IMG/VR virus record: IMGVR_UViG_3300044700_000691
Location: 152,816 to 216,815 of that record
Reading direction: 5' to 3' (one strand)
DNA length: 64,000 nt
This document shows, one piece after another, positions 777 to 63,622 of this stretch. The translations under genes and the position numbers were made by a program. Position 1 is the first letter of the stretch. Each line of letters begins with the position of its first letter. The notes below the pieces were generated by a model. The model saw nothing but the letters and a program-made list of their open reading frames with translations. It was not told where the DNA came from and searched no databases.

Positions 777-1262
777 TTATGCTTGTGGTTTTTCTCCTCT
801 AAAGGCTTTACCTTTATTGGAATCTTTTCTTTCTGGATCAACTGTTTTATAGTTTGCCCAAATTTCATTGTATATTCGACAGCTTGCTCCCATAAAATTA
901 ATAATGCCGACAAATTTCTTACGATCATCGCCAGTCATCTTGGAAACTTTTCTTCCAATACGTCGAGCATCGTCAAGATCTAATTCTTCTTCGTCATCTT
1001 TACCAACTAATTCTTTAAGAGAATTTCTTTTCTTTTCATTTAGTTGAATAAAAGACTCAAACGTCATTGATCTTGAGTCTTCAGCATATGCTGACTCATG
1101 GTCAGCTGCATATGATTCAAATCGATCAAGCTCGTCGCCAGTCATTAGACCAGTTGCATACATAACAAATCTTTCATAAAGATCTGCTCTTTCCTGCATA
1201 GGAATACCTGCTTCATCCATATATTGAATTATGCTAGGAGGTACGCTTAGTGTAATCCTCAT
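777..1262 (-). CDS. hypothetical protein with internal capsid-targeting-like motif (MTFESFIQLNE)
   Basis: 161-aa ORF tightly packed in the post-capsid operon. Confidence 0.75.
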   Translation of the reverse strand: MRITLSVPPSIIQYMDEAGIPMQERADLYERFVMYATGLMTGDELDRFESYAADHESAYAEDSRSMTFESFIQLNEKKRNSLKELVGKDDEEELDLDDARRIGRKVSKMTGDDRKKFVGIINFMGASCRIYNEIWANYKTVDPERKDSNKGKAFRGEKPQA

Positions 1263-1273
1263 CGAGTTTTTAA

Positions 1274-1627
1274 TTATTTTTGTTTGCTAGCCATCTTAGG
1301 ATCAACTGACTTAGTGATAGCTGTACCTTTAATAACTAATTTGCCAAATGCTGGATCAACTGACTTAGTGATAGCTTTACCTTTAGGCGCAGCTTCTGCT
1401 AAGTTTTGGTTAACAGACTTAGTGATTTTAGCACCTTTAGCGGCTTTAAGATCAGTCATTTTAGTGTCAACTGATTTTTTAATGCTAGAACCTTTAGGCA
1501 TATCTAATTTAGCCATTTTAGGATCAACGCTTTTTCCTAATCTAGAACCTGCAGCAGGCATAGATGCTAAGTTTTGGTTAACTTTTTCAGTTAGGAATTC
1601 TGTGTAAGACAATACTTGGTTTGCCAT
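1274..1627 (-). CDS. small basic repetitive protein, probable internal head protein
   Basis: N-terminal VLSYTEFLTE motif; six 17-19-aa repeats starting KSV(D/N); Lys-rich; downstream of a GATAAATA promoter. Confidence 0.7.
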   Translation of the reverse strand: MANQVLSYTEFLTEKVNQNLASMPAAGSRLGKSVDPKMAKLDMPKGSSIKKSVDTKMTDLKAAKGAKITKSVNQNLAEAAPKGKAITKSVDPAFGKLVIKGTAITKSVDPKMASKQK

Positions 1628-1628
1628 T

Positions 1629-1706
1629 TCATTGTTTCATTTTTTTAATTACTCGATCTTCTCTGATCACTCCTGGTCTCTCCAATCCTGTAATATGAGT
1701 ATTCAT
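1629..1706 (-). CDS. possible 25-aa leader ORF (MNTHITGLERPGVIREDRVIKKMKQ)
   Basis: TGA stop 1 nt before the next ATG; start codon lies inside an 8-bp perfect hairpin. Confidence 0.35.
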   Translation of the reverse strand: MNTHITGLERPGVIREDRVIKKMKQ

Positions 1707-1785
1707 ATTAAAAATAAGTTAAGGCCGTTAGAGGGTCTCAGATTAAATAGTTGTTATAATTACCTAATTAGACAATTATTTTAGT

Positions 1786-1793
1786 TATTTATC
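1786..1793 (-). promoter_or_regulatory. late promoter-like GATAAATA
   Basis: One mismatch from T4 gp55 consensus TATAAATA; directly after the capsid-gene terminator. Confidence 0.55.
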
Positions 1794-1810
1794 TGACCTC
1801 TTAAAATAAG

Positions 1811-1832
1811 AAAGCCCTCCGAAGAGGGCTTT
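1811..1832 (-). terminator. intrinsic terminator after major capsid gene
   Basis: AAAGCCCTC-UUCG-GAGGGCUUU stem followed by U-rich tract. Confidence 0.85.
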
Positions 1833-1861
1833 ACTTTATTGAGATATTAATCTATTAAAGA

Positions 1862-3451
1862 CTAAGCAACATACTCACCAGTTAAGTGTTTAACACCCGT
1901 TGCATTAGCACCGTCAACAATATTAAATTGTACGTACTGAGTTTGTGGATGCCATCCAGCTTCAACTAGAGCATATCTTGACTTCATTCCGATTTTCGGA
2001 GAGAATGTACCCTCTGAAATAGTTTGAAGAGATTCAGCCATGATGTAAGGCATGAATTTAAGTCCTGGCTCTTCGTCAGCACCTTTACGTCCGATAAGAA
2101 CAGTGTTGTTATCAAAACGTAAGTTTGGATCAACATAGATAGTTAAACCGTGAACTTTACCAGCAGGGTAAAGAGTTCCAGCAGTAGAACCTAAATCATT
2201 GTTGAATGGAGCGATTGAATAACCAGCAGCATCAGCCATAGCAGATGCAACTTTAGCAGAAACTACTGCGAAAGTACCAGCTCCGAAACGAGCTCTGTGA
2301 TAAATTAAGTTAGCAGATTCAAGAATCTTAGTAACTAATTTTCTTTGAGAAGTCGTTACGTTTTCAAAAGTACCAGAACCTGGTTGAACGTTAACGTTAG
2401 CAACATAACCTTCAGTTGCGTTAGCAAGTGTAGCATTAGTTGTAGCTAAGTTTTTAACTTTAGAAACGATTTCTTTGTTGATTGTTTGAGCAAGCTCATT
2501 AACAGCAACGTTCTCCAACATAGAGATTGCATCGAAATTCCAAACTCTGTTAAGATCTTGGATTTGTTCAACAGTTGCAGAGATAGAAACTTGAGAAGTT
2601 TTAGCCTCAACGAACTTAGTAAACATTTTAAGACCCATTTGACGGAATTTAGAACCTTCACCAGCTGCTCTATCCATAGATTGAGTATACTCATTTCCAG
2701 AAAGGAAAGGACCAGAGAAATCTGTGTGAGCTTCAGTTGAAGTCGAAGTGAATCCAGAGATGTGGTTTTCTAAAGCAGATACTAAATCAACTTTGTTAGC
2801 CGCATCTAAAGTTACACTGTTTAACACTTTACCAGCACCTAAGTAAGTAGCTAAAGTGATAGAATCATCAGAAGTAACTACTTTGAAGATCAATTGACCG
2901 TCAATACGTGAAGCACCTACGAATTGTAGTGTAAGTACTGCAGCTGTTCCAGCTCCATCACCATCAACTGTGTACTCAGTACCAGCTGTGAATGTAGCCT
3001 TTTCACCTGTAGTGAAATCAGCGATTTTGATCAAATATGGTTCGAATTCAGTACCTAAGTTACCACCTTGGTAAACATAATCTAGGTAAGGAAGGAAACC
3101 AACTGGAGAGTCCATAGGAACTACACCAACTAGGTCGAAACCAATTGTTTTTGCTGCTACTTGAATAGCAACTGGCAATAAACTTGGGAATTTATCACCT
3201 GAACCGTTTGCACCTGTTGTAGGAGCTAATGGGTTACCGATTCCACTGATAGAACCTGGTTGTTGATAGAATAAGCCTGGAGCAACTGTAGCTTCATTGA
3301 TTGAACCTGCGTTTTCGAACATTGCGTGATAGTGGCAATAATCTACTAACCAAGGACGTGAATCTGCGTTTACACCATAGCTTTCTAAAACTGGAGCCCA
3401 AGTTGACTTAATCGAAGAATCGTTTAGTCTTTTAAATACTTTTGTAGACAT
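1862..3451 (-). CDS. gp23: major capsid protein (T4 gp23-like)
   Basis: W.PVLE N-terminus, LLPVAIQVAAKTIGFDLVGVVPMDSPVG, ELAQTINKEI, YMPY/MPYI and KIGMKSRYAL motifs typical of gp23. Confidence 0.95.
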   Translation of the reverse strand: MSTKVFKRLNDSSIKSTWAPVLESYGVNADSRPWLVDYCHYHAMFENAGSINEATVAPGLFYQQPGSISGIGNPLAPTTGANGSGDKFPSLLPVAIQVAAKTIGFDLVGVVPMDSPVGFLPYLDYVYQGGNLGTEFEPYLIKIADFTTGEKATFTAGTEYTVDGDGAGTAAVLTLQFVGASRIDGQLIFKVVTSDDSITLATYLGAGKVLNSVTLDAANKVDLVSALENHISGFTSTSTEAHTDFSGPFLSGNEYTQSMDRAAGEGSKFRQMGLKMFTKFVEAKTSQVSISATVEQIQDLNRVWNFDAISMLENVAVNELAQTINKEIVSKVKNLATTNATLANATEGYVANVNVQPGSGTFENVTTSQRKLVTKILESANLIYHRARFGAGTFAVVSAKVASAMADAAGYSIAPFNNDLGSTAGTLYPAGKVHGLTIYVDPNLRFDNNTVLIGRKGADEEPGLKFMPYIMAESLQTISEGTFSPKIGMKSRYALVEAGWHPQTQYVQFNIVDGANATGVKHLTGEYVA

Positions 3452-3468
3452 TTTGTTTTAAAAATTTT

Positions 3469-5499
3469 TTAGTTTTGTGCTCTTCTTTTTAGAGCGTCGA
3501 GGTATGTGTTACCATAGCCTCTTTGATGTTCCGCAACTTTCTCAATCGAGATAAAACCTTCTCTACCTTGGCTTTCGTTGATGTGTTGCGCATTTTTATT
3601 TTGTTTTTCGAAATAAATTCTTTCATTAATTCCTCTTAGATCTCTGCTCTCCCAGAAGTTTTTAACTTGGTAAGGAGTGTTAAGAACAGTTAGGGAAGCT
3701 TGTGCTTCTAAGCGGCTCTTTTCTGCAGGGGTCATGCTTTCAAAAATATCTTTGAATTTAGTAGGCATGAATTTGATTAAGGTAGGAACGTTTTCTTGTT
3801 GTTTGTTAAGAACTGACTCAATAATTTGGATAACGTCTTCTTCTTTAAAATAAACTGCTCCAGAAAGAGCTTCTATAATAGCAGTTTTTTGTGTTTGATC
3901 TAAATTAAAGAATCTTGATTTATTATCTTCGTTAAGAAGTTTTAGGAATGGATATCTGCTTTCTAATACAGATTTAGCTGAGTTATCTTTAATATGCTTA
4001 ACAATTGCATTTACTGAACCAACTATATCGTTAACTTTAGAACCTTCAGCAACTTGGTAGTTTACTGATTCGTCTAATTTTTCGATTTGGCTAAATGCAG
4101 AGGCAGATTTGGTAGAAAGACCAGATTTACCGTCATTTAGTGATTCTGCAATATACTCAGAATATTTAATTCCTTTTTCAAGGTTTTCAGCAAGATAATT
4201 AGCGTAACCAACTGAGTGCTTTAAGTTTTCAGCAACGTATTCAGTGTATCTGATACCTTGTTCTGATTTTTCAGCAACATACTCAGTGTATTGAATTCCT
4301 TTATCAAGGTTTTCTGCTAAGTATTCTGTGTACTTAATATTTTTGTTTACGTTTTCTGCGATATGCTCAGAGTAATCAATTGCATTATTTAAGTTTTCGC
4401 CAACGTATTCAGAGTAACCGATACCTTGTTCAACTTTTTCAGCAAGATAATCCGAGTAATCGATTACCTTATTAACTTTCTCAGCAACATGCTCAGAATA
4501 GTCAATTGATTTGTTTAACATGCCAGAAAGGTAATTGTTATATTCAATTACTTTGCCAAGCTCGCTTGAAAGATAGTTAACGTACTCAACTAATTGGTTA
4601 TTAGTTGCAGGTGTGTTTTCTTCTTCAGCATTTAGATCTGTAACCAAATTCGGATCTTCATCTGTTTGGTCTTCTTCGGTAACTGCGAAGTTATCAACCA
4701 TTTTATCTACACTCTCCTTAAGAGAATCAAACTTGCCTTTAACAAGTTCAGAATATTGGTTGAACGCTTCTTTCGTTACAAACTCATTAGTCATGTGTTT
4801 GTTATTATTTTCCATAGGTTTTACTATCTCTTCATTATTTATCTTATAAACTTTGATCGATTCTGCGAGGTTTAAGCTTTCAGAAATATCTACCAATTTG
4901 TTTATAATTGAGCTTGATTTAATATTATCCAAAGATTCGAAAAGCATAGAATAATTGCTTTGGAAACTTTCGTTAACTGATCTTCTAAGAACTGCTTCGC
5001 TAAAACCAGGCTCAGCGACTAAGTCGTATGTGAATATTCTTTGGATTTTTACTTTACCCTCATTTGCTACTTGACCAGCAGCTCTTGAAGAGGTTGAAAT
5101 TGTACAGCCTGACTCAACTAGAGTTTTTGCAATCTGACCAGCCGGTGTATTTAGCAGACGTACTTTAATTTTTACGTTATTAGAATCTTGATCGTACCAT
5201 AATTTCTCAATTACGTGAGAAACATTCTTAAGTGAAACATCAAAATTTTGTGGATGATCTAACTCACCAAATAGTTGACCCTTTTCGATTTTCTCGTTTA
5301 GGTATTCTAGGTGTGGAAGATACTCAGCTTTTTCGTAGATTCGGTTGTTGTTATTCTTTGTGTCAAATACTGCACAAACCCCTTCCATAACAATGTCACC
5401 ATTCTCTGACTTAACTGTGTTTAGACCTTCATTTACTCTTTCAATAATGAAGAGCATATCTGAGGTATTTGTAATTTCGTTTACGTCTGTAAGGACCAC
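3469..5499 (-). CDS. gp21: prohead protease (gp21-like) fused to scaffold/core protein (gp22-like)
   Basis: N-terminal EGVCAVFDTKNNNNRIY, GELDHP, VSH, ISTSSRAAG and TYDLVAEPGFSEA are gp21 motifs; C-terminal coiled-coil repeats; immediately upstream of gp23; GTG start. Confidence 0.9.
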   Translation of the reverse strand: MVLTDVNEITNTSDMLFIIERVNEGLNTVKSENGDIVMEGVCAVFDTKNNNNRIYEKAEYLPHLEYLNEKIEKGQLFGELDHPQNFDVSLKNVSHVIEKLWYDQDSNNVKIKVRLLNTPAGQIAKTLVESGCTISTSSRAAGQVANEGKVKIQRIFTYDLVAEPGFSEAVLRRSVNESFQSNYSMLFESLDNIKSSSIINKLVDISESLNLAESIKVYKINNEEIVKPMENNNKHMTNEFVTKEAFNQYSELVKGKFDSLKESVDKMVDNFAVTEEDQTDEDPNLVTDLNAEEENTPATNNQLVEYVNYLSSELGKVIEYNNYLSGMLNKSIDYSEHVAEKVNKVIDYSDYLAEKVEQGIGYSEYVGENLNNAIDYSEHIAENVNKNIKYTEYLAENLDKGIQYTEYVAEKSEQGIRYTEYVAENLKHSVGYANYLAENLEKGIKYSEYIAESLNDGKSGLSTKSASAFSQIEKLDESVNYQVAEGSKVNDIVGSVNAIVKHIKDNSAKSVLESRYPFLKLLNEDNKSRFFNLDQTQKTAIIEALSGAVYFKEEDVIQIIESVLNKQQENVPTLIKFMPTKFKDIFESMTPAEKSRLEAQASLTVLNTPYQVKNFWESRDLRGINERIYFEKQNKNAQHINESQGREGFISIEKVAEHQRGYGNTYLDALKRRAQN
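4132..4593 (-). repeat. 11 x 14-aa (42-nt) tandem repeat in scaffold region
   Basis: Units such as SIDYSEHVAEKVNK, NIKYTEYLAENLDK, GIKYSEYIAESLND; 462 nt = 11 x 42. Confidence 0.9.
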
Positions 5500-5518
5500 G
5501 TTGCCTGATTTTTTTTAT

Positions 5519-5526
5519 TATTTATA
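5519..5526 (-). promoter_or_regulatory. T4-type late promoter TATAAATA
   Basis: Perfect consensus 20 nt upstream of the protease/scaffold start. Confidence 0.75.
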
Positions 5527-5569
5527 TCGTATCAGTACAAATAATTTATAACAGATGACAACTTGTCAT

Positions 5570-6424
5570 CTATATAGTTTTATTTATTAAGCGTAGTAGG
5601 TCCTGCTTCTCGAGATCAGTTAGTTTATCAAAATTAGGTACCCTTGTATGAATTTTAAAGACATATGCACCTTTATTTTGAAACCCAGTAGCTAATCCTC
5701 GGCCTGGAATGGTTATTTGAATATCGCTAAAGGACTTAGCGCTAAGAGATTTTATCTTAAATTTTGTGCCAGACACAGATTTAAAGATTAGATTTTCAAT
5801 ATTAATTAACTCGGTTAAGTCTACTTCTCTGTTATCTATAATATTACCGGCTGCATCCATAACAATACCAGATGGTATTACTATTTCTAATAGGACATAT
5901 AGATTACCAATAAATGTGCGATTAAACATTGCACCTCCACCAAGTTTACCAGTATTTCCCATATTTTGGAAAGTTAATCTAGAAAATGCTCGATTACCAT
6001 CAAAAATTAATTGGTGTTTGGTTTTGTCTGGGCTAAGCTCTACACTAAAACGATTTGGGGTAGACTCGCCCTTTTTATTATAGACTACTTCAATAGTCTT
6101 ACCAGTTAAAAGGTCTTTAAGATCGATTTTTTGATTAACTACTATATCAAGATCAATACCCCAATTTTGGGTAAAAATATCGGTTGAGCCAAATCCGCTA
6201 AACATGTCACGAAGGTCCTCAAAGTTAGCACCGCCTTTATCGTAACCTTTACGCTTTTCTACATCTCCTAATACACCATAAGCTTCGGCGATTTCCTTAA
6301 ATTTGGAATCACCGTCAGGATTTTTATCAGGGTGATATTTAATGGCAAGTTTTCGATATGCCTTTTTAATATCTGCCTGATTGCATCCGCGCTCAACTTC
6401 TAGTATATTATAATAGTCTTTCAC
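5570..6424 (-). CDS. dnaJ: DnaJ-family co-chaperone (J-domain plus C-terminal domain, no Zn finger)
   Basis: DYYNILEV...[19 protein letters not shown]-domain with HPD motif. Confidence 0.92.
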
Positions 6425-12948: not shown

Positions 12949-13668
12949 TTATCCGTGAAACGGATCGAGATCTGGATTAGGAATCATTTTCCAGCGTCTT
13001 TCTAGGTTCATGCCTTGGCCTCTAGCTAATTGAATCTCTGTTGAGTGATCTTTAATTGCATTTAGTGCACCAATATAATCACGTCGATCAACAAACGATT
13101 GAACATAGTCAGCAACATCATCAGTTAAAGAAACTCTATAAACAACTGGATGGCGCTGTTGATTAAAGCTGCAGCGCATCATCATCATATTTAGCTGACC
13201 ATTGTATGCTTGCATTACGCTCTTTCGGGTCGGGGCAGTTTCATCAGCAAGACCTAAATCATGGATTCTATCTAATTGATTTAGGTAATTATGATCAATA
13301 TTTTCTTTAGTAAAAGATTCTACACCATGACAATCTGCAATACCAAAGTACCAACTAGCTGGCTTCTTTGCTTCATTTAAAAAAGAAGAAAAGGTTAGTA
13401 CTCTACTTTCAGGCAACGGCTCATTTACATCAATTAGGTCTAGATCTGCATCGCGAAGATCGTAAATCTCGTCAAAGGTTGTACCTTCGAACTCAATAGG
13501 TTCTTCTAAATCGACCATGTATAAAGTTTGATCTGGTGCATAGTCTAATCTATAGACTTTGCCAATAGTAACAATTTTATTATCAATTGGGGCGCCTACC
13601 AGATTGAGACGGTCCATTGTATCTTTAGATAATCTAAGCTTAACTTTATCGCCGATTTCAAATGCCAT
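12949..13668 (-). CDS. hypothetical protein, N-terminal SH3/KOW-like domain, internal capsid-targeting-like motif
   Basis: FEIGDKVKL start; ESRVLTFSSFLNEA. Confidence 0.7.
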   Translation of the reverse strand: MAFEIGDKVKLRLSKDTMDRLNLVGAPIDNKIVTIGKVYRLDYAPDQTLYMVDLEEPIEFEGTTFDEIYDLRDADLDLIDVNEPLPESRVLTFSSFLNEAKKPASWYFGIADCHGVESFTKENIDHNYLNQLDRIHDLGLADETAPTRKSVMQAYNGQLNMMMMRCSFNQQRHPVVYRVSLTDDVADYVQSFVDRRDYIGALNAIKDHSTEIQLARGQGMNLERRWKMIPNPDLDPFHG

Positions 13669-13936: not shown

Positions 13937-13937
13937 G

Positions 13938-14414: not shown

Positions 14415-14417
14415 CGT

Positions 14418-14705
14418 TTATGACTTTTTATTTAGTTGGCGCTTTACCTCGGCTCTAACCTTTTCCATCTTTTTAGCATAGGCTGGATTATCATTACGAT
14501 TAAATACAATTTGCTGGTTAAGGCTACCTGTAATTTTTCTCATATCGCCGCCTCTAGTTTTAATTAACCATGAAGCTAAGGCTTTGATTCCAAGGCTTTT
14601 AAATCTACCATTTGCATCAGGGGCATTTGAATCGTGCCAATCTGGTGAGTTTTTGGTTTTTCTTGCCTCTGTAATAAATTCTGTGTATGTAAGTATATTA
14701 TTCAT
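14418..14705 (-). CDS. basic hypothetical protein, probable internal head protein
   Basis: True start MNNILTYTEFITEA at 14705, 4 nt after the upstream stop; very close to T4 CTS MKTYQEFIAE. Confidence 0.75.
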   Translation of the reverse strand: MNNILTYTEFITEARKTKNSPDWHDSNAPDANGRFKSLGIKALASWLIKTRGGDMRKITGSLNQQIVFNRNDNPAYAKKMEKVRAEVKRQLNKKS

Positions 14706-14709
14706 ATAA

Positions 14710-15237: not shown

Positions 15238-15251
15238 TTAATAATTAGATT

Positions 15252-15596
15252 TTAGTATTCCTTTGGGTCTTCTTGAATTAGTTCCTTATCTTGAGAATCG
15301 TTAACTTCATTAATTAAAAAGTTAAATACCTCTTCTACGTCATCTTTTGATGTAGCAATATGGTCAGCTGCCCATGCGTGTCCGTTTTTCAAAATTTCAT
15401 CAACACTAGACTCGTCCATTTCTAATAAAAGATCAACACATCTTTTAATTGTTTTAAGATTTCCAAAAAACATATAATTTTCATATTCAGCTTCATGTGA
15501 ATCTTCTTTGCTGTGTATTGGTTCAGCTGCTAGTTGAATTTGAGTTGGCTCGAAATCTTCTTGTGAAAATGATTCGAAAGTTTTAATTTTTTGCAT
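15252..15596 (-). CDS. hypothetical protein with capsid-targeting-like N-terminus
   Basis: MQKIKTFESF; acidic; tightly packed in operon. Confidence 0.7.
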   Translation of the reverse strand: MQKIKTFESFSQEDFEPTQIQLAAEPIHSKEDSHEAEYENYMFFGNLKTIKRCVDLLLEMDESSVDEILKNGHAWAADHIATSKDDVEEVFNFLINEVNDSQDKELIQEDPKEY

Positions 15597-15597
15597 T

Positions 15598-20758: not shown

Positions 20759-21259
20759 TTAGTCCAAAGATCCGTATTTTCCTGCTCCCATATCCTTTGC
20801 AAAATCTTTGCCAGCCTTTGAAGAAACGCTAAGGCTAATGCCTTTTAGTAAACCAGCATCCTCTGGGTTCTCTTCAAAATAGGTAATTAAGCTAGCTAGG
20901 TTAACATTTTGATATGGTTGAATTGTTCCTTCTGGTAGTTTTTTTTCTAATTCTCTACCAGATGAATAGTCTTTCCAGTTAAGATTCCAACAATAAAATC
21001 TAACTTCTTCTTTCATTTTTGTTGTATAGTAACGGTCAACATCTGCAAGTCTGGCTTGAACTTCAGAAAGATCAGTTTTATATGAAGTCGAGTGGCCATA
21101 GATATCAGCTGGTGTTCCAATGCTTAAACTATCTGATGTAATATCAGTCAATTTAACTAGTTGGTCCATAAGTTCCTGAAATGGTAATCCTTTAAGTGCC
21201 TCAGATTCTTCTGCTTCGTTTAGGAACTGCTTAAAGTTTCCAATAGTGCGTTTTGTCAT
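20759..21259 (-). CDS. hypothetical protein with capsid-targeting-like N-terminus
   Basis: TIGNFKQFLNEAE; follows GATAAATA at 21282-21289. Confidence 0.7.
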   Translation of the reverse strand: MTKRTIGNFKQFLNEAEESEALKGLPFQELMDQLVKLTDITSDSLSIGTPADIYGHSTSYKTDLSEVQARLADVDRYYTTKMKEEVRFYCWNLNWKDYSSGRELEKKLPEGTIQPYQNVNLASLITYFEENPEDAGLLKGISLSVSSKAGKDFAKDMGAGKYGSLD

Positions 21260-33535: not shown

Positions 33536-33763
33536 TTAGGCAGTTGGTGCCTGTGCAGCAGCCATTTTAGCAGCTTCTGCTTTCTTTTTATCCTCTTCGG
33601 TTTTTGCAGCAGTAGCATCAGCAATTTTTAATTTAATTGCATCAAGTTCTTTTTGAGAATCTAGTACCTTTTGCATAGCAGTTGCTTCTTGTTGGTTTAA
33701 CGCAACTAGGTCTGCTGAAGCATCTTCATTTAGACCAAAGTAGTTTTGAAATGACTTAATCAT
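33536..33763 (-). CDS. small coiled-coil protein with capsid-targeting-like N-terminus
   Basis: MIKSFQNYFGLNEDA; GATAAATA at 33784-33791. Confidence 0.7.
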   Translation of the reverse strand: MIKSFQNYFGLNEDASADLVALNQQEATAMQKVLDSQKELDAIKLKIADATAAKTEEDKKKAEAAKMAAAQAPTA

Positions 33764-33782: not shown

Positions 33783-35126
33783 TTATTTATCGGAAATATA
33801 GTCCGAAAAAGTTTTTATACGGGTTGTGCCAGAACCAGGATTTGCTCCAAGTTCTTGACGACTTGCTTTATATGAACCCCATTGAGATGGTACGCGAATA
33901 GTTCCGGAAACTCGTTGTGGATTTCTTTCCGGTTGCAGGTCATCCATATCTGGATTGCTTTTCGTGCGGTCTCTGAATAACTCTGGTGTTAGCAGGTCCT
34001 CTTCAATCTTTCCACCTAATATCATCCATACCTTTTTAGGGTCCTTTCCTTCAGGGATCCCCTGTGAAAAGCTATCAAAGTCTTGTGCTAACCAAAACTC
34101 TCTCATTAGAGTGCCAGATACGCCATCTTCATCTCCGTCTGCACCAGAGTTTCCTCCAAATTCAGGGCGTTCAGTTTCTATTCTATTAATTTTAGAAATT
34201 GAGCCTTGCCATTTTTCCATAGCAGCCCATCTGGGCATATCCTCATCTGTAGCATAAAGATTAACTACCGTATTTGGTGCATATTGTGTTTGGCCAAGAG
34301 CTTCAACAAATTCATATCCACTTCTGACTGGAGTAACGTTTGATAGGTGCAATTCAACATTATCAAAGTCTTCTAAATAGTAATCTAATACATCCATTGC
34401 AGATTTGCCGCTAATTCCAGCCATTTCTGTCTTGGAAATAAACACATGTACCTCGTCGTTTTCTTCTGCAATTTTTGCAATTGCATCATAGTGACCGGCA
34501 TGTGGTGGTTTAAATTTACCACTAAATATTCCGACGGTTTTAATATTTAATTTTGGAACTTGAGTACGACCAATTTTTCTGGTCTTCATTGTAATTTCTG
34601 CAAACTCAGTCTCTAGACTCTTTGCAAGTGCTAGGTTTTTGCGATCATCATCATAAAAAGTAAAATGAGTAAAGCCTTTTGCCATTAGTTTACGAAAGGC
34701 TTCTTTTTTCTTTTCTGCAATAGTGCCGTCGAATCCAAATTCTGGATCACTTACTGCATAAATTAGGTTGGGGTGAATATCTATACCGTGGGATAATAGA
34801 AATTCTCTGACTAGTTTCTTATTATCTCTAGCTGTAATAATCCCGACAGCAGTCCCGGATTCGTATGCAGAACGTAATATGTTAAGTACCCATTCAACTA
34901 ATCTTCCAGCCTTTAAAATATTAGCATCATTGAATTGGGTATAGTTAACCTCATGATGAGGTTCCTTTTCATAATCGTTAAACTCCTGTGGAGTAAGATC
35001 AAATTTCTCGCCAGTCAAGGCATCCTTAACAAGGATCTTTGCATTGGTAACAACTAGCGTGTCATCCAAATCAAATACGATAATTGAATTGTCTCTAGAA
35101 AATGCCATTTCGTTTACTGTTTGCAC
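33783..35126 (-). CDS. HAD phosphatase fused to HxGH cytidylyltransferase-like domain
   Basis: VFDLDDTL, IITAR, FYDDD (HAD); IFSGKFKPPHAGH and VSGTLMRE (nucleotidylyltransferase); C-terminal IKTFSDYI motif. Confidence 0.8.
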   Translation of the reverse strand: MQTVNEMAFSRDNSIIVFDLDDTLVVTNAKILVKDALTGEKFDLTPQEFNDYEKEPHHEVNYTQFNDANILKAGRLVEWVLNILRSAYESGTAVGIITARDNKKLVREFLLSHGIDIHPNLIYAVSDPEFGFDGTIAEKKKEAFRKLMAKGFTHFTFYDDDRKNLALAKSLETEFAEITMKTRKIGRTQVPKLNIKTVGIFSGKFKPPHAGHYDAIAKIAEENDEVHVFISKTEMAGISGKSAMDVLDYYLEDFDNVELHLSNVTPVRSGYEFVEALGQTQYAPNTVVNLYATDEDMPRWAAMEKWQGSISKINRIETERPEFGGNSGADGDEDGVSGTLMREFWLAQDFDSFSQGIPEGKDPKKVWMILGGKIEEDLLTPELFRDRTKSNPDMDDLQPERNPQRVSGTIRVPSQWGSYKASRQELGANPGSGTTRIKTFSDYISDK

Positions 35127-35260: not shown

Positions 35261-36637
35261 TTATAATTCAGTCTGTATTGACTCGACTGCTTCTTTGTAT
35301 TCTTCCATAGTTACTCCAATTTCGCTTGCTTGCTGGTCTGGAGACATAGTCAATGATCTTTGTTGATTATCTGCGTTAGCCAACCATTGTGTAACTTTAG
35401 TCATTACCTCTGGAGATACAGATTCGTACACAGCAGATTCCATTAAACCATTTCTATAACAACCAAGTGCCTCTTTAACGTAATCATTATATTCTATCGC
35501 AGAATCGTCGTTATGTATTTCTAGAGCTTCATTACAAAGTTTTTCGCAAACCTCATAAATTGATTCGCAAGTAGATTCATAACAAGCCGACTCGTAATTT
35601 GCATATTCATTAACCGTAATACCGTCATCTACCATTTCATACATACATTTTTCCATATATGCACAGGCTTCATTAACATAACCATCGAACTTATGTTCAG
35701 GGTCTTCATCATCTTCATACATTGAAGCATCTGAACAAGTAGATTCGCATATTGATTCAATTAGGTGATGTGCAGCTTCAGATAACATTGATTTACTACC
35801 ATCATGGCAAGTATGACCTAGGCCTTCTGCCATATACTCAGAATTTCCTGGGTTATTCATTATTCTTCCATTGGGAAGTGTTACACGGTCCTTTCCGATT
35901 CCATATTCAAAGTTATTTGAATTGTGACCTAATTCGTTTGGAATTTCGTCAGCTTCCTCATCATCACTATACGTATCACAGTGTTCTCCGCAATCAGAGC
36001 AAATATCTCCCATCATAACAGCAGCTCCGCAACAGTCTGAAGATACTCCATACTCGTACGCATCTCTAGGATCCCATGATTCATTTGTACGTGACTTAGC
36101 GCCATCATAAATAGTTTTTAACCATGATTCAAGTTCTTTATTATCACCTGCATCTAGGTTAGAATATTCTTTTTTGAATGCTCTAACAAAACTTCTAAAA
36201 GTTTTAGATTCTTGAGCAAGTAGATCAATTTCAGACATTGCGCCTTCTTTAATAGCAACAGCTTTCTTTTTAGGGGCACCAGATTTAGCGTCGGCTGCCG
36301 CTTTCTTCATAGACTCCTTTTTATCTCCGTCCTTATCTAAATCTAAAAAATCAGGTTTGCCTGATTTACCAGGTGCAGCCTTTTTACCGGCTGGCTTTTT
36401 ACCAGCTTTCTTATCTAGATATGCCTGTAAACCCGCGTTAAGCTGTTTCTTTTCATTTAAGAAATCTGCAAATCTTAATACTTTGTTTTCTGCGATTTGT
36501 GGTTCTTGTCCACATGTTTCGCAATCTTCGGTTACTTCTGGATTACGGCCAGCTTCATTATCAAACTGTTCGTCCTCTGAGTAGTAATTTGGCTTCTTTA
36601 AAAAAGAAGGTAAGTCTTTGTTAGAAAATTTTCCCAT
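35261..36637 (-). CDS. mosaic acidic/Cys-rich protein, probable internal head protein
   Basis: VLRFADFLNE motif, KPDFLDLDKDG module, SDCC...CSDCGEHC module, duplicated CESTC domain; GATAAATA at 36659-36666. Confidence 0.7.
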   Translation of the reverse strand: MGKFSNKDLPSFLKKPNYYSEDEQFDNEAGRNPEVTEDCETCGQEPQIAENKVLRFADFLNEKKQLNAGLQAYLDKKAGKKPAGKKAAPGKSGKPDFLDLDKDGDKKESMKKAAADAKSGAPKKKAVAIKEGAMSEIDLLAQESKTFRSFVRAFKKEYSNLDAGDNKELESWLKTIYDGAKSRTNESWDPRDAYEYGVSSDCCGAAVMMGDICSDCGEHCDTYSDDEEADEIPNELGHNSNNFEYGIGKDRVTLPNGRIMNNPGNSEYMAEGLGHTCHDGSKSMLSEAAHHLIESICESTCSDASMYEDDEDPEHKFDGYVNEACAYMEKCMYEMVDDGITVNEYANYESACYESTCESIYEVCEKLCNEALEIHNDDSAIEYNDYVKEALGCYRNGLMESAVYESVSPEVMTKVTQWLANADNQQRSLTMSPDQQASEIGVTMEEYKEAVESIQTEL

Positions 36638-47769: not shown

Positions 47770-48147
47770 TTAAAAGCCTTGTTCACGACGTAATTGAGCT
47801 TCATCGTGATCCATTTGAATTTTAGTCATTCTTTCCATTTCCTCGTCACTAACTGATTTCTTAAATCTAATTCTAGGGTACCAGTAACGATCGTCATCAC
47901 TGTCAAAGTCTGGATAAGATTGCTCAGTGTCTACTGAATATCCTTGGTCTTCAACCCATTTCATCATGTTAGAAAATTCTTCTGGATGAATATCGCCCCG
48001 TACCTGAATAGTAATTTGACCGCTGTTCGCATATGTATCAGAATAGGCTCTAACATTAAATTTATTGCTAAAGTCTACACCTAATTGTTCTGGCGTATAG
48101 TCTTCATTTGATTCATTAATGTATTGGCTAAAAGGTTTAATGTGCAT
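47770..48147 (-). CDS. hypothetical protein with capsid-targeting-like N-terminus
   Basis: MHIKPFSQYINES. Confidence 0.75.
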   Translation of the reverse strand: MHIKPFSQYINESNEDYTPEQLGVDFSNKFNVRAYSDTYANSGQITIQVRGDIHPEEFSNMMKWVEDQGYSVDTEQSYPDFDSDDDRYWYPRIRFKKSVSDEEMERMTKIQMDHDEAQLRREQGF

Positions 48148-51535: not shown

Positions 51536-52093
51536 TTATCCCAATTCATAAAATTTTTCAAGAGCAGCTTGTATTCTGTCCGATATTGATGGATCAGCGG
51601 TTTCAGCGATATCTGCAATTAGTGCAATACCATTTACAATACTATCATAACCTGGAAGATATGTAACATTTTTATCCTTTTTGTACATACTTAATACATC
51701 AATTAGGGTATCTTCAATAAAACCTGCAATGGCTTCAACATTGACATTCATTGGATCCTCTCCATCTGGAGAAATAATTTCAGCATACTGTCTAACCTCT
51801 TCGCCAATCTCTGCAATTTCTTCAGCGTGCGATTTGTTATCTTGGTAAACGTCTTTCTTTTTAGTTTTAGTAACAAGATCCTTTGGAACTCTAACAATCC
51901 TTTTGCTAGAATCCAATAGTTCAATTTTAATAAAGTCATCATCCATATCAATTACTTGGCCAGGTCCTCTATAACTAGTTACATAGTCACCAGGCTCAAT
52001 ATCAGGATTTTCCTCGTTTTTCTGAAACTCTGCTTCAGGATCTTTCATAAATTTATCAAGATCAAAATCTTCGTATAGCTTAATATATTTCAT
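51536..52093 (-). CDS. acidic protein with capsid-targeting-like N-terminus and SH3/KOW-like domain
   Basis: True start MKYIKLYEDF; IEPGDYVTSYRGPGQVIDM. Confidence 0.7.
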   Translation of the reverse strand: MKYIKLYEDFDLDKFMKDPEAEFQKNEENPDIEPGDYVTSYRGPGQVIDMDDDFIKIELLDSSKRIVRVPKDLVTKTKKKDVYQDNKSHAEEIAEIGEEVRQYAEIISPDGEDPMNVNVEAIAGFIEDTLIDVLSMYKKDKNVTYLPGYDSIVNGIALIADIAETADPSISDRIQAALEKFYELG

Positions 52094-52460
52094 TGTACTT
52101 AATAATAAGTTCTCCAAGAACTTCGATTTTTCCAACTAACTTTTGAAAGTCAGTTTGCTTAATTTTAACAGTGTCTTTAGTTGAGGCAAGTTCATCAATT
52201 AAAGTATTGTATTCTTTTATTGCAGAGTCGCGATCTTCAACCGTCCAGCCCTTTTTTGCTTTTTTGTAATATGGTAACTTAACAACAAAGTGGTTATACG
52301 TTAACATTGCGTTACCGCCGCGTTCCTTTGCATTTTCTGCAATTTTAGTTGCTCCCATTAATCGGGACTCGTCAAACTCAATAAATTTCTTTTTGAGATT
52401 GTCAGTAGGTGCTTTAGCCTCATTGATAAATTCGCTAAACTGTTTAACTTGATTCTTCAT
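52080..52460 (-). CDS. hypothetical protein with capsid-targeting-like N-terminus
   Basis: QVKQFSEFINEAK; GATAAATA at 52466-52473. Confidence 0.75.
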   Translation of the reverse strand: MKNQVKQFSEFINEAKAPTDNLKKKFIEFDESRLMGATKIAENAKERGGNAMLTYNHFVVKLPYYKKAKKGWTVEDRDSAIKEYNTLIDELASTKDTVKIKQTDFQKLVGKIEVLGELIIKYNEIY

Positions 52461-59661: not shown

Positions 59662-59681
59662 TCTCTCTTCTTCAATATTAT

Positions 59682-60058: not shown

Positions 60059-60069
60059 GTTGCTTTATT

Positions 60070-61916: not shown

Positions 61917-61922
61917 AATTTA

Positions 61923-62195
61923 TTAAGCTAATAGCTCATTAATTTTTTCAATAATATCTGCTTGGGATTTTACGCCAACCGATTGGTGTACAGTTTCGCC
62001 TGCCTTTAAGTATACCAGGGCAGGAATTGATCTAATTCCATGTAGGGCTGCTGTATCTGGATCTTCATCCGCATTTACTTTAGTGATTTCAACTAAATCG
62101 TTTTCGTTAAACTGTTCAGCTACTTTTTCCATAACTGGACCAAATGTTCTACATGGTCCACACCATGGCGCTGAGAAATAAATTACATTAATCAT
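61923..62195 (-). CDS. trxA: thioredoxin
   Basis: FSAPWCGPC, IRSIPAL. Confidence 0.95.
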   Translation of the reverse strand: MINVIYFSAPWCGPCRTFGPVMEKVAEQFNENDLVEITKVNADEDPDTAALHGIRSIPALVYLKAGETVHQSVGVKSQADIIEKINELLA

Positions 62196-62208
62196 CGTTT
62201 TCTTTATT

Positions 62209-62496
62209 TTATTTTACTCTTAAAACCTGTTTGGATTTTTCTTCTATCCATTCAAACTTTCTATATTTAAAATCCTTCCACTCTTCAAAATCATCTAGCA
62301 TATCGATAACTTCGGTTGGAATCAGGACAAATCCGTCTGGCGTAGTGCCAGCAAATTTATAATAATTAGTGTCCTTTAATTTTTCTTTGACTAGTGGATT
62401 TTCAACCGGTTCATCATATAAACCAGCCTCTTGGTCTAATCGCATCATTTCAGCAAGGATTTTTCCTCGCTCTTCTTTAGTAAGCTCCTCTGACAT
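62209..62496 (-). CDS. hypothetical protein
   Basis: 95-aa ORF after tRNA-Leu. Confidence 0.65.
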   Translation of the reverse strand: MSEELTKEERGKILAEMMRLDQEAGLYDEPVENPLVKEKLKDTNYYKFAGTTPDGFVLIPTEVIDMLDDFEEWKDFKYRKFEWIEEKSKQVLRVK

Positions 62497-62513
62497 TTAG
62501 TTGAGGTTATTTT

Positions 62514-62602
62514 TGGTACCGACGGCCGGAATCGAACCGGCACGGGCATTACTGCCCAAGAGATTTTAAGTCTCTCATGTCTACCTGTTTCATCACGTCG
62601 GC
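62514..62602 (-). tRNA. tRNA-Leu(UAA)
   Basis: AGAGA-CT-TAA-AA-TCTCT anticodon arm, long variable arm, GGTTCGATTCC, encoded CCA. Confidence 0.95.
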
Positions 62603-62649
62603 ATAACTAAGTTATTATACTACGTTTGTTAACTGGGTTATCTTCCTTA

Positions 62650-62657
62650 GATAAATA
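62650..62657 (+). promoter_or_regulatory. late promoter-like GATAAATA
   Basis: 23 nt upstream of the GH19 gene start. Confidence 0.55.
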
Positions 62658-62680
62658 TTTATAGAAATAACTAATTATTA

Positions 62681-63622
62681 ATGGGACAAAACATTAGAGA
62701 CTTTAAGTCATGGCAAAGATTAAATGAAGACACTTCATTTTTAGGATGGATTGGCGATCTTGCAACATCGGCATTTACCGGAAAGGCAGTTGAGCCTGCA
62801 CCAAGTTCAGTAACTTCAATTGCAGAACCTGGATCAACCGCAGCTGCAGTTATAGATAAGACTGCTTCTGCCCTAGGTATAAAGACTGATACTAAAGCTG
62901 ATGATAAAGAAAAATCTAAATCAGATTCTGCTAAGTCGTCTACTAAATTTAAAAAGTTTGACAAGAAAATTCCAGCAGAAAACGTCTTAGCGCTTGAGGC
63001 TGCAATGGAAAGACATGGAATTACAAATGACTTTGCAAGAAAAGCAATTCTTGGTGTAATTTCAAAAGAAAGTTCAAACTTAACTCCAGAAGGGGACTAT
63101 AGTAATACTTCAAATTCAAGAATCAGAGAAGTATATGGTGCAAGAGTAGCAGATCTTTCCGATAGTCAACTTACTGCACTAAAAGAAGAGCCTACTAAAT
63201 TTTGGGATAGAGTATATGGAGTAGACGATCCAACTGGTCGTGGTGTAAAATACGGCAATACTCAACCTGGCGATGGGGCTAGATATAGAGGTCGTGGATT
63301 TAACCAAATAACATTTAAGGCTAACTATAAAAAACTGCAAGACCTATTTGATAAAATGGGTAAGCTTAAAGCTGGTACTGAAATTAATATTGTTGAGGAA
63401 CCTGAATTACTAGAAGATCCAAATATTGCAGCTGAATTTGCAATGTTGTACTTTATTAATAGTTTTAAAGGAAAGGGTAAAGACCTAAACTCCTACAATA
63501 ATTTAGAATCTGCTGTTACTGACTATGTTCAAGCCAATGCTGGATGGGGTACAGATATTCGTGCCGGCCATAGTGCAAGAGGTTATGCAAGAGCACTAGA
63601 CTATGCATCAACTATTGCATAA
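62681..63622 (+). CDS. GH19-like lysozyme with capsid-targeting-like N-terminus (probable virion-associated hydrolase)
   Basis: AILGVISKES, GNTQPGDGARYRGRGFNQITFKANY; N-terminal NIRDFKSWQRLNE; no PG-binding domain. Confidence 0.8.
   Translation: MGQNIRDFKSWQRLNEDTSFLGWIGDLATSAFTGKAVEPAPSSVTSIAEPGSTAAAVIDKTASALGIKTDTKADDKEKSKSDSAKSSTKFKKFDKKIPAENVLALEAAMERHGITNDFARKAILGVISKESSNLTPEGDYSNTSNSRIREVYGARVADLSDSQLTALKEEPTKFWDRVYGVDDPTGRGVKYGNTQPGDGARYRGRGFNQITFKANYKKLQDLFDKMGKLKAGTEINIVEEPELLEDPNIAAEFAMLYFINSFKGKGKDLNSYNNLESAVTDYVQANAGWGTDIRAGHSARGYARALDYASTIA

What the first reader, a model, noticed from the sequence alone, without database searches (positions are those of the whole stretch)
777..63622. 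About 19 unrelated proteins share a T4 capsid-targeting-like tag, including internal and C-terminal copies
Seen: the motif [IV]-x-x-[FY]-x-x-[FYW], often followed within a few residues by hydrophobic-x-E. N-terminal copies: 1274 (VLSYTEFLTE), 13938 (VKPFNEYI), 14418 (ILTYTEFITE), 15252 (IKTFESF), 20759 (IGNFKQFLNE), 24962 (IKLFENF), 33536 (IKSFQNYFGLNE), 47464 (IMSFDEF), 47770 (IKPFSQYINE), 51536 (IKLYEDF), 52080 (VKQFSEFINE), 62681 (IRDFKSW..LNE). Internal copies: 777 (MTFESFIQLNE), 12949 (VLTFSSFLNE), 25746 (ILLFEEF), 35261 (VLRFADFLNE). C-terminal copies: 15598 (ILDFTSF), 17627 (IKPFADW), 33783 (IKTFSDY). Many of these genes sit directly behind an ATAAATA late promoter. I did not notice the motif at the termini of replication or metabolic genes. 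Known: T4 internal proteins use a 10-aa N-terminal CTS (MKTYQEFIAE) that gp21 removes after Glu. Inference: a genome-wide modular address label loads a large cargo, including enzymes, into the head for ejection into the host, and unlike T4 it may work at any position in the chain.
Basis: partly seen in the sequence, partly recalled or inferred. Interest (0 to 1): 0.78.

Follow-up and report, generated by a model that had tools for sequence, protein, structure and literature searches.

The report
Head-targeting tag on many phage proteins
About one in ten proteins of this uncultured freshwater jumbo phage begin with the same ten-residue peptide, which matches the signal phage T4 uses to load proteins into its head; the phage's own scaffold contains eleven copies of a related peptide, which hints at how the cargo is loaded.

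Summary
The window is the last 64 kb of a 216.8-kb IMG/VR phage contig related to phages of Bacteroidota. Genome-wide, 24-25 of about 254 predicted proteins start with I-K-x-[FY]-x-x-[FYW]-[LI]-x-E, against about 2 expected, or 0.03 for the full motif. Without the tag these proteins share no detectable similarity. The conserved positions are the ones shown by T4 genetics to drive head targeting (4, 7) and gp21 cleavage (8, 10). T4's own tag scores 18 bits on this phage's profile. The genome encodes a gp21-type protease with the catalytic His and Ser, and a gp23-type capsid protein.

New here: the protease is fused to a scaffold that holds 11 tandem 14-residue repeats with the same core, Y-x-x-Y-[LIV]-x-E. 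A conserved internal late-promoter-like motif suggests a nested scaffold gene.

Of the seven internal or C-terminal copies, four are real: 12949, 35261 and 33783 by statistics, 777 by homology. Three are chance-level: 25746, 15598 and 17627.

Two relatives carry 15-28 such tags. Phage PAU has a different shared tag on 20 proteins. Packaging and cleavage remain untested. I class this as a new variant of a known kind.

The parts
1274..1627 (-). Tagged gene directly after the capsid gene. The tag is VLSYTEFLTE (residues 5-14). The mature part is very basic (pI 10.3) with KSVDPKMA-like repeats, so it resembles an internal protein.
   Evidence: tag conserved in relatives down to about 58-62% capsid identity
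13938..14414 (-). Tagged gene (VKPFNEYISLLE), basic (pI 10.1), with a DUF5824 domain
14418..14705 (-). Tagged gene (ILTYTEFITE), basic (pI 10.7). The start at the internal Met is supported by orthologues.
15252..15596 (-). Tagged gene (IKTFESF; no Glu at tag position 10), acidic
20759..21259 (-). Tagged gene (IGNFKQFLNE) behind GATAAATAA
24962..25744 (-). Tagged gene (IKLFENF), acidic, no known family
33536..33763 (-). Tagged gene (IKSFQNYFGLNE) behind GATAAATAA
47464..47685 (-). Tagged gene (MMDNRIMSFDEFVAK) behind ATAAATA
   Evidence: orthologue in G001
47770..48147 (-). Tagged gene (IKPFSQYINE)
51536..52093 (-). Tagged gene (IKLYEDFDLD); an orthologue in G001 has the same tag
52080..52460 (-). 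Tagged gene (VKQFSEFINE) behind GATAAATAA
62681..63622 (+). Tagged GH19/endolysin-like peptidoglycan hydrolase (IRDFKSWQRLNE). Its catalytic domain is homologous to the untagged endolysin at 46210-47034.
777..1262 (-). Internal copy MTFESFIQLNE (codons at 1035-1067). Orthologues in more distant relatives are about 105 aa and carry this tag at the N-terminus. Here an N-terminal extension of about 50-65 aa precedes it, and the Met before the tag is conserved.
   Evidence: profile score only 6.6
12949..13668 (-). Internal copy VLTFSSFLNE (residues 90-99, nt 13372-13401). Distant orthologues start with the tag just before the conserved WY[FY]GIADCHG domain, and two lack it. Here an 89-aa domain is fused upstream.
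35261..36637 (-). Internal copy VLRFADFLNE (residues 53-62, nt 36452-36481). The 52-aa leader plus tag is conserved among relatives, while the sequence after 'EKK' is swapped. Lies behind GATAAATAA.
33783..35108 (-). C-terminal copy IKTFSDYISDK-stop (nt 33789-33818) on a protein of 441 aa from the inner Met (447 from the upstream GTG) with a weak cytidylyltransferase-like match. Asp stands in place of the cleavage Glu. The last codons overlap the GATAAATAA of the next tagged gene.
3469..5499 (-). Prohead protease-scaffold fusion, 676 aa, GTG start, behind TATAAATAA
   Evidence: conserved in all relatives
5047..5400 (-). gp21-type serine protease domain (Peptidase_S77). The His82 and Ser137 equivalents of the T4 catalytic residues are invariant.
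4132..4593 (-). Eleven tandem 14-residue repeats, x-[IV]-x-Y-x-x-[YH]-[LIV]-[AGS]-E-x-[LV]-x-x. Seven repeats match the tag core aromatic-x-x-aromatic-[LIVM]-x-E. Hydrophobic period is 3.5 residues.
4836..4842 (-). Internal ATAAATA inside the protease-scaffold ORF, at the same place in all 20 relatives examined and followed by a conserved in-frame Met
3469..4794 (-). Inferred nested scaffold gene starting at Met236 (codon 4792-4794)
   Evidence: RNA-library contig depth rises downstream of about 4716-4850 in 2 of 4 runs (weak)
1862..3451 (-). gp23-type major capsid protein. A conserved I-N-E (residues 51-53, nt 3293-3301) is the likely maturation cleavage site.

Best explanation
The shared peptide is a capsid-targeting and processing propeptide of the T4 type.

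Proposed mechanism:
1. It is a short amphipathic helix, [IV]-[KR]-x-[FY]-x-x-[FYW]-[LI]-x-E. Its two aromatic residues dock the protein onto the prohead core.
2. That core is built from the protease-scaffold protein and, probably, a nested scaffold-only product of the same gene.
3. After shell assembly, the gp21-type protease cuts after the Glu of [LI]-x-E. The 10-16-residue tag is released and the mature cargo stays in the head with the DNA, to be ejected into the host.

The scaffold holds 11 tandem units with the same core (Y-x-x-Y-[LIV]-x-E). The most likely docking mode is therefore that a tag mimics one scaffold unit and co-assembles with the array, which the protease later dices at each unit.

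The cargo set is large, about 25 proteins or 10% of the proteome. It includes three very basic T4-IP-like proteins beside the capsid gene, two cell-wall hydrolases, a NUDIX hydrolase, a metalloprotease-like protein and many fast-evolving orphans.

Shown: the motif, its enrichment, its conservation, and the protease, capsid and scaffold genes. Inferred: docking, cleavage, packaging and ejection.
For: - Enrichment and controls.
- Information content peaks at tag columns 0, 3, 6 and 9. Columns 3, 6, 7 and 9 correspond to T4 CTS residues 4 and 7 (targeting) and 8 and 10 (processing) according to PMC9026906. The T4 tag MKTYQEFIAE (PMC8442874; T4 ipII/ipIII) scores 18.0 bits on this phage's profile.
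- The T4 gp23 cleavage region reads FGSFLTE, the same core.
- The gp21-family protease keeps the catalytic His and Ser. The capsid protein is of the gp23 family with a conserved [IL]-x-E in its N-terminal domain.
- The tags have helical amphipathicity: hydrophobic moment 0.49 at 100-110 degrees against 0.28 for random 11-mers.
- The scaffold repeats share the core motif and are conserved across the clade and in a 462-kb relative.
- Selection acts on the peptide rather than the DNA: 49% mean nucleotide identity between tags, mixed synonymous codons, and F/Y/W exchange.
- The tag is modular. Orthologues exist with and without it. A conserved leader plus tag sits on swapped cargo. Tag-stripped proteins are unrelated.
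- Tagged genes are associated with ATAAATA, which also precedes the protease-scaffold gene and large ORFs that I take to be structural.
- The tag is clade-wide: 28 proteins in complete relative G001 and 15 in G003, against 3 in T4, 1 in PAU and 2 in PTm1.
- Phage PAU has its own tag, MKT[LI]xxL[YF]E, on 20 proteins. These include its scaffold and two proteins annotated 'internal capsid protein'.
Against: - There is no virion proteomics or any other direct evidence of packaging or cleavage.
- Eight of 23 tags lack Glu at tag position 10.
- Most tagged proteins are acidic, unlike the T4 internal proteins.
- A profile built only from the scaffold repeats does not preferentially retrieve the tags (3 of its top 40 hits). 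The resemblance is limited to the four-position core, and the upstream hydrophobic residue is shifted by one position.
- The scaffold part shows no detectable homology to T4 gp22.
- PTm1 and the 462-kb phage also have protease-scaffold fusions but show no such tags, in the whole PTm1 genome and in 41 kb around the capsid gene respectively.
- That ATAAATA is a late promoter is inferred by analogy with T4 TATAAATA.
Confidence: 0.7

Rival explanations
1. The peptide is only a recognition and cleavage site for the prohead protease, or a propeptide that keeps enzymes inactive. It does not itself direct proteins into the head, and the tagged proteins reach the virion, if at all, by other contacts.
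For: The core motif is also about twice as frequent as expected inside proteins (19 against 8.9). The scaffold repeats could simply be dicing sites. The capsid protein has [IL]-x-E without the aromatic pair.
Against: The most conserved tag columns are the two aromatic residues, not the Glu. In T4 those positions drive targeting, and an Asp at position 10 blocks cleavage but not targeting. Strong C-terminal copies keep the aromatic half and lack the Glu in 3 of 3 cases. A third of the tags lack the Glu.
Confidence: 0.12
2. The tag is a recognition signal for the phage-encoded chaperone or unfoldase set: the DnaJ-domain protein next to the protease gene and the ClpB/ClpA-like double AAA+ ATPase at 36662-38653. 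It would mark proteins for assisted folding, unfolding or translocation, possibly but not necessarily into the head.
For: The DnaJ gene lies directly upstream of the protease-scaffold gene, and the Clp-like ATPase directly upstream of the internal-tag gene 35261. A comparative study suggested that Clp-type AAA+ proteins of jumbo phages may aid virion assembly or act as translocases (PMC7824862).
Against: There is no known Clp or DnaJ recognition motif of this form. The match to the T4 tag and to the scaffold repeats is specific. This reading complements the main one rather than excluding it.
Confidence: 0.08
3. The shared N-terminus has no function as a peptide. It would be a by-product of A+T-rich 5' coding regions that help translation start in a host without Shine-Dalgarno sequences, or a recombination footprint of mobile gene cassettes.
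For: Almost no gene here has a Shine-Dalgarno sequence. Lys, Ile and Phe are mildly enriched at N-termini. Tagged-gene clusters gain and lose genes between relatives.
Against: Shuffling only residues 2-18 keeps that composition yet gives 1.9 matches against 25 observed. Trp (TGG) fills the second aromatic position in 6 of 23 tags. The tag DNA is only 49% identical on average. The peptide is kept across relatives while its codons change.
Confidence: 0.05

Closest known systems
T4 capsid-targeting sequence (CTS) of internal proteins IPI, IPII, IPIII and Alt, removed by gp21 (Mullaney and Black 1996, as reviewed in PMC9026906, PMC3012670, PMC5694885)
   Same: An N-terminal peptide of about 10 residues on otherwise unrelated proteins. 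Aromatic residues at positions 4 and 7, [LI] at 8 and Glu at 10. A gp21-family protease and a gp23-family capsid protein. Cargo genes are variable and evolve fast.
   Different: About 25-28 tagged proteins per genome instead of the 3 that score as tags in T4. Recognisable enzymes are among them. Most cargo is acidic. The protease is fused to the scaffold, and the scaffold carries 11 tandem tag-like units. Rare internal and C-terminal copies occur. The relatives infect Bacteroidota.
Sphingomonas (Sphingobacterium) phage PAU head module (GenBank NC_019521 annotation; host reassigned in PMC3738902)
   Same: A jumbo phage of a Bacteroidota host with a related capsid protein and protease. Twenty proteins share one N-terminal tag. 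Some are annotated 'internal capsid protein', and the scaffold protein itself carries the tag.
   Different: The tag sequence differs (MKT[LI]xxL[YF]E, often followed by K-L-N-E). Protease and scaffold are separate genes. No 14-residue repeat array was seen in the scaffold.
Long N-terminal propeptides of ejection and inner-body proteins in phiKZ, 201phi2-1 and SPN3US (PMC5694885, PMC9026906)
   Same: Many head proteins are cut after Glu by a gp21-related protease. The propeptides are thought to target proteins into the prohead. They resemble the internal copies here, where the tag lies 50-90 residues from the N-terminus.
   Different: Those propeptides are long and have few sequence determinants beyond the Glu. 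Here a short, sharply defined motif is shared.
P1 DarB N-terminal packaging signal (PMC9024508)
   Same: An N-terminal signal is sufficient to direct a reporter into the capsid.
   Different: A single protein family, about 30 residues, with no shared motif and no protease link reported.
Protease-scaffold fusions and nested scaffold genes: Tenacibaculum phage PTm1 'prohead core scaffolding protein and protease'; lambda C/Nu3 (from my own knowledge)
   Same: The protease domain is followed by scaffold in one frame, directly upstream of the capsid gene. PTm1's scaffold part is also repetitive. An internal in-frame start for a scaffold-only product is inferred here.
   Different: The repeat sequence of PTm1 is unrelated, and only the protease domains align. 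No genome-wide tag was seen in PTm1.

Membership tests
T4-type capsid-targeting / gp21-processed propeptide | Short N-terminal peptide shared by proteins that are otherwise unrelated | tested here: met
   25 against 1.9 expected. No BLASTP similarity after removing the first 18 residues.
T4-type capsid-targeting / gp21-processed propeptide | Targeting determinants: aromatic residues at CTS positions 4 and 7 (T4 IPIII genetics, PMC9026906) | tested here: met
   Tag columns 3 and 6 (0-based) are F/Y in 23 of 23 and F/W/Y in 23 of 23, the highest information content in the tag.
T4-type capsid-targeting / gp21-processed propeptide | Processing determinants: [LI] at position 8 and Glu at position 10, with cleavage after Glu | tested here: inconclusive
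   L/I/V in 16 of 23 and Glu in 15 of 23 (Asp in 2). Several others have L-N-E two residues later. Cleavage itself was not tested.
T4-type capsid-targeting / gp21-processed propeptide | The genome encodes a gp21-family prohead serine protease with the catalytic His and Ser | tested here: met
   PF03420 E = 2.8e-14 in the genome search and 2e-12 on the protein. 28% identity to T4 gp21, E = 2e-11. 'LDHP' and 'SSR' align with the residues that are Ala in the solved chain 5JBL and His/Ser in wild-type T4 gp21, which I take to be the catalytic pair. Both are invariant in 21 relatives.
T4-type capsid-targeting / gp21-processed propeptide | gp23-family capsid protein with an N-terminal domain removed at [LI]-x-E | tested here: inconclusive
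   PF07068 E = 3e-49. A conserved I/L-x-E at residue 53 aligns across relatives. Cleavage was not tested.
T4-type capsid-targeting / gp21-processed propeptide | Late expression together with head genes | tested here: inconclusive
   ATAAATA lies 15-25 nt upstream of 13 of 24 tagged genes and of the protease-scaffold gene and large ORFs that I take to be structural. Its promoter function is inferred. RNA libraries hold the region.
T4-type capsid-targeting / gp21-processed propeptide | Tagged proteins are present in virions with the tag removed, and are ejected into the host | not testable with these tools
   The phage is uncultured and no proteomics is available.
Nested scaffold gene inside a protease gene | Protease and scaffold in one reading frame upstream of the capsid gene | tested here: met
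   A 676-aa ORF, 660-700 aa in all relatives.
Nested scaffold gene inside a protease gene | Internal promoter and in-frame start that yield a scaffold-only product | tested here: inconclusive
   ATAAATAA is invariant at nt 645-660 in 20 of 20 relatives although the flanking codons vary. A conserved Met follows. The rise in RNA contig depth is suggestive only.
T4 gp22 scaffold family | Sequence homology to gp22 | tested here: not met
   hhalign probability 0.5%.

The most novel reading that the evidence does not exclude
The tag is a free-standing copy of the scaffold's own repeat unit. Cargo would be loaded by co-polymerising with an 11-unit array on a protease-scaffold fusion, which the protease then cuts at every unit. 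The two halves of the code would be separable: the aromatic pair gives loading, and [LI]-x-E gives release. That would let the phage place the loading half internally or at the C-terminus to retain uncleaved cargo. About 10-13% of the proteome, including cell-wall hydrolases and probable anti-defence enzymes, would travel in the head. The same logic, with the scaffold carrying the cargo's motif, would hold with different sequences in PAU and in T4, where the gp22 N-terminus MLKEQLIAE resembles the tag's ...EFIAE.
Probability: 0.3. Interest if true: 0.78.

Novelty: new variant of a known kind. Interest (0 to 1): 0.62.

Why it matters
None of the papers I read names the partner that the T4 targeting sequence binds in the prohead core. 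Here the scaffold displays eleven tandem copies of a tag-like unit, which gives a concrete and testable docking model.

The scale, about 25-28 tagged proteins per genome, implies that these Bacteroidota jumbo phages deliver a large and rapidly changing protein payload with their DNA. That payload includes lysins, a NUDIX hydrolase and many orphans, and it is a natural place to look for anti-defence factors.

A short, well-defined tag would also give a way to package chosen proteins into phages of Bacteroidota, as the T4 tag does for E. coli phage.

The motif can be used to annotate likely head cargo in metagenomic phage genomes, where most such genes have no other annotation.

Tried and rejected
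- DNA similarity to deposited phages: none near, one trivial distant hit.
- Pfam and PHROGs on about 30 tagged proteins: mostly no family. ESM Atlas look-up of 24962: uninformative.
- I tested whether a profile built only from the scaffold repeats retrieves the tags. It does not (3 of its top 40 hits are N-terminal). The claim is therefore limited to a shared four-position core.
- Homology of the scaffold part to T4 gp22 or to the PTm1 scaffold: not detected.
- Same-type tags in PTm1 (whole genome), Flavobacterium phage MaF61 and the 462-kb phage LR756500 (about 41 kb around each capsid gene): none.
No model or fold search was made. Helicity rests on hydrophobic-moment and periodicity calculations only.
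- Composition bias, DNA repeats and paralogy as explanations of the tag were tested and rejected.
- Internal copy 25746 and C-terminal copies 15598 and 17627 were rejected as chance-level, although they are conserved in close relatives whose proteins are 77-98% identical overall.

Full report
**What the window is.** The window is the last 64 kb of a single 216,815-bp IMG/VR virus contig, classed as linear and about 84% complete by CheckV. It has no near DNA relative among deposited phages. Its capsid protein and protease are most similar to those of phages of Bacteroidota:
- the 460-735-kb 'huge phage' assemblies LR7565xx;
- the Prevotella Lak phages;
- Tenacibaculum PTm1, PTm5 and pT24;
- Flavobacterium MaF61;
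- phage PAU, whose host is a Sphingobacterium (PMC3738902).

Almost no gene has a Shine-Dalgarno sequence. The sequence occurs in many freshwater metagenomes and metatranscriptomes. I called 254 genes with a simple codon-usage caller.

**The observation.** The N-terminal class is far above chance.
Whole-protein shuffles give 1.9, and so do shuffles confined to residues 2-18, which keep any N-terminal composition bias.
- With [ILVM]-x-E appended the count is 12 against 0.03.
- None of 98 uncalled shadow ORFs has it.
- A blind enumeration of gapped four-residue patterns returns the tag as the top N-terminal pattern, 19 against 0 in a control window.
- The consensus from 23 copies is [IV]-[KR]-x-[FY]-x-x-[FYW]-[LI]-x-E, starting at residue 2-6.
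- The proteins are unrelated once the first 18 residues are removed.
- The 30-nt tag DNA is only 49% identical on average, with mixed synonymous codons and F/Y/W exchange. The peptide, not the DNA, is what is kept.

**Internal and C-terminal copies.** The loose motif is at chance away from the N-terminus: 64 against 70 internal, and 6 against 4 in the last 20 residues. A profile of the N-terminal tags leaves three strong copies: 12949 (19.1 bits), the C-terminus of 33783 (18.5) and 35261 (15.9). That is 3 against about 0.3 expected.

The same excess recurs in two relatives' genomes, with three hits of 15 bits or more in each against 0.1-0.2 expected. It is absent from T4, PAU and PTm1.

- **12949:** distant orthologues begin with the tag directly before the conserved domain, and two lack it. 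Here an 89-residue domain has been fused upstream.
- **777:** it scores low, but its peptide aligns with the N-terminal tag of about 105-residue orthologues. An N-terminal extension was added in the close clade, and a Met just before the tag is conserved.
- **35261:** the 52-residue leader plus tag is conserved, while the sequence after it is exchanged between relatives.
- **33783:** the C-terminal copy is kept in relatives that are 82-91% identical. It has Asp where the cleavage Glu would be, and its last codons form the GATAAATAA of the next tagged gene. The near-C-terminal copies in the two relatives also lack the Glu.
- **25746, 15598 and 17627:** not distinguishable from chance.

**Why it is a T4-type targeting and processing signal.** The T4 tag is MKTYQEFIAE (PMC8442874; T4 ipII and ipIII in the T4 record). 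Amber-suppressor genetics on IPIII placed targeting mainly at residues 4 and 7 and processing at residues 8 and 10. An Asp at position 10 blocked processing but not targeting (PMC9026906).

Those four positions are among the most conserved columns here: aromatic, aromatic, [LI] and Glu. The T4 tag scores 18.0 bits on this phage's profile. T4 gp23 reads FGSFLTE just before AEIGG; from my own recollection, gp21 cuts gp23 after that Glu.

The window encodes:
- a gp23-family capsid protein at 1862-3451, with a conserved I-N-E at residue 53;
- a gp21-family protease at the start of the 3469-5499 gene;
- a T4-type portal at 30630-32339.

The protease's His and Ser align with the two residues that are Ala in the solved T4 gp21 chain 5JBL. 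Both are invariant in 21 relatives.

The tags have the hydrophobic moment of an amphipathic helix, peaking at 100-110 degrees. ATAAATA lies 15-25 nt upstream of 13 of 24 tagged genes against 31 of 230 others (p = 1.5e-5). It also precedes the protease-scaffold gene and large ORFs that I take to be structural. By analogy with T4's TATAAATA, I read it as the late promoter.

**The scaffold (new here).** The protease gene continues into a 676-residue protein. Residues 303-456 are eleven tandem 14-residue units, x-[IV]-x-Y-x-x-[YH]-[LIV]-[AGS]-E-x-[LV]-x-x. Examples are NIKYTEYLAE and GIQYTEYVAE. The DNA shows a 42-nt period.
- Seven units match the tag core, aromatic-x-x-aromatic-[LIVM]-x-E.
- Unit YTEYLAE and tags YTEFLTE and YTEFITE are nearly the same.
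- The hydrophobic period is 3.5 residues, which is helical and heptad-like.
- The fusion and the repeats are present in every relative examined, at 58-100% capsid identity, and in degenerate form in a 462-kb phage.

Inside the ORF, an ATAAATAA is invariant at nt 645-660 in 20 of 20 relatives although the flanking codons vary. A conserved in-frame Met (Met236 here) follows it. This suggests a nested scaffold-only product. In two of four lake RNA libraries, contig depth is 4-5 times higher downstream of about 4716-4850 than over the protease domain. That fits the idea but is weak evidence, because these are assembler depths.

The resemblance between tag and repeat is limited. A profile made only from the repeats does not pick out the tags, and the upstream hydrophobic residue is shifted by one position.

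**Proposed mechanism.**
1. Late genes make tagged proteins.
2. The tag helix docks through its aromatic pair onto the core built from the protease-scaffold, most simply by standing in for one repeat unit.
3. The shell assembles around the core.
4. The protease cuts after Glu in every repeat and in every tag.
5. The peptides leave and the cargo stays in the head.

Copies with Asp or no acidic residue at position 10 would be loaded but not cut. This fits the T4 result for Asp-10, and it fits the C-terminal copies. Only the sequence features are shown; every step of the mechanism is inferred.

**The cargo.**
- The three tagged proteins closest to the capsid module (1274, 13938, 14418) are very basic, pI 10.1-10.7, like the T4 internal proteins. 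Most others are acidic.
- Recognisable domains: a GH19/endolysin-like hydrolase at 62681, homologous to the untagged endolysin at 46210. Outside the window there are an Amidase_2, a NUDIX hydrolase and a metalloprotease-like protein.
- The rest have no family.
- Replication and nucleotide-metabolism genes in the window are untagged: DNA polymerase, UvsW-type helicase and thymidylate synthase.

**Relatives and controls.** Counts of N-terminal profile hits of 10 bits or more:

| Genome | Hits | Expected |
|---|---|---|
| This genome | 24 | 0.2 |
| Complete 271-kb relative G001 | 28 | 0.2 |
| G003 | 15 | 0.3 |
| T4 | 3 | 0.3 |
| PAU | 1 | 0.3 |
| PTm1 | 2 | 0.2 |

PAU has a different tag, MKT[LI]xxL[YF]E, often followed by K-L-N-E, on 20 of 290 proteins. 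These include its scaffold gp152 and the proteins gp142 and gp154, which are annotated 'internal capsid protein'. Large tag families are therefore a recurring trait of this broad group. In PAU and here, the scaffold carries the cargo's motif.

**Novelty.** The targeting concept, and the idea that T4-like phages use it to load varied proteins, are established (PMC9026906, PMC3012670). I found no report of a tag family this large, of tag-like repeats in a scaffold, or of the PAU tag, in the library searched. I class it as a new variant of a known kind.

**Limits.** Gene calls are my own. Nothing here tests packaging, cleavage or ejection.

Noticed in passing
window 5570-6424 (-): A DnaJ-type co-chaperone (J domain E = 1e-24, weak DnaJ_C match) is encoded directly upstream of the protease-scaffold gene. 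This is an unusual neighbour for head-assembly genes.
   Followed up: partly
window 36662-38653 (-): A ClpB/ClpA-like double AAA+ ATPase (AAA_2, AAA_lid_9, ClpB_D2-small) lies directly upstream of the internal-tag gene 35261 and is conserved there in relatives.
   Followed up: partly
window 4836-4842 and 4792-4794 (-): A conserved internal ATAAATAA and an in-frame Met sit inside the protease-scaffold ORF, suggesting a nested scaffold gene. The protease ORF itself appears to start at GTG, and relatives have no ATG near that position.
   Followed up: yes
L147 (phage PAU 99450-124097) and whole PAU genome L148-L158: Twenty PAU proteins start with MK[TS][LI]xx[LM][YF]E. They include the scaffold gp152 and the 'internal capsid proteins' gp142 and gp154. 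This is a second, different genome-wide tag.
   Followed up: partly
window 33783-33800 (-): The stop region of gene 33783 (codons S-D-K-stop) is itself the GATAAATAA promoter-like motif of the next gene. The promoter is embedded in a coding sequence, and both are conserved in relatives.
   Followed up: partly
window 1274-1627 (-): The small basic protein after the capsid gene is built of repeated [KT]KSVDPKMA-like units. Relatives have the same design with different unit sequences.
   Followed up: no
window 35261-36637 (-), C-terminal half: The mature part is rich in Cys, Tyr and Glu and contains scaffold-repeat-like units. AIEYNDYVKE is the top hit of the scaffold-repeat profile outside the scaffold (17.5 bits).
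   Followed up: no
window 13670-17211 (-) compared with L095-L101: The tagged-gene cluster gains and loses small genes between close relatives. For example, 14418 and 13938 are missing in some, and an extra small gene is present in others. This is cassette-like turnover.
   Followed up: partly
window 17849-20743 (-): A 964-aa protein with an N-terminal RNA-ligase domain and a long unannotated remainder.
   Followed up: no
window 700-5600, RNA runs X7, X11, X14, X16: Lake metatranscriptome assemblies hold this region. Contig depth over the capsid gene is several times that of the flanks, so the phage appears to be active in nature.
   Followed up: partly
T4 genome 18966-19130 (-), locus L159: A 54-codon T4 ORF begins MKTFKEFIKE, a tag-like N-terminus outside the three ip genes. 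I did not check its annotation.
   Followed up: no
L108 and L109 (relatives of gene 12949): In these contigs the tagged orthologue is 279 aa and the match covers query residues 1-238. The extra N-domain of 12949 may lie after the conserved domain there, which would be a domain-order swap.
   Followed up: no
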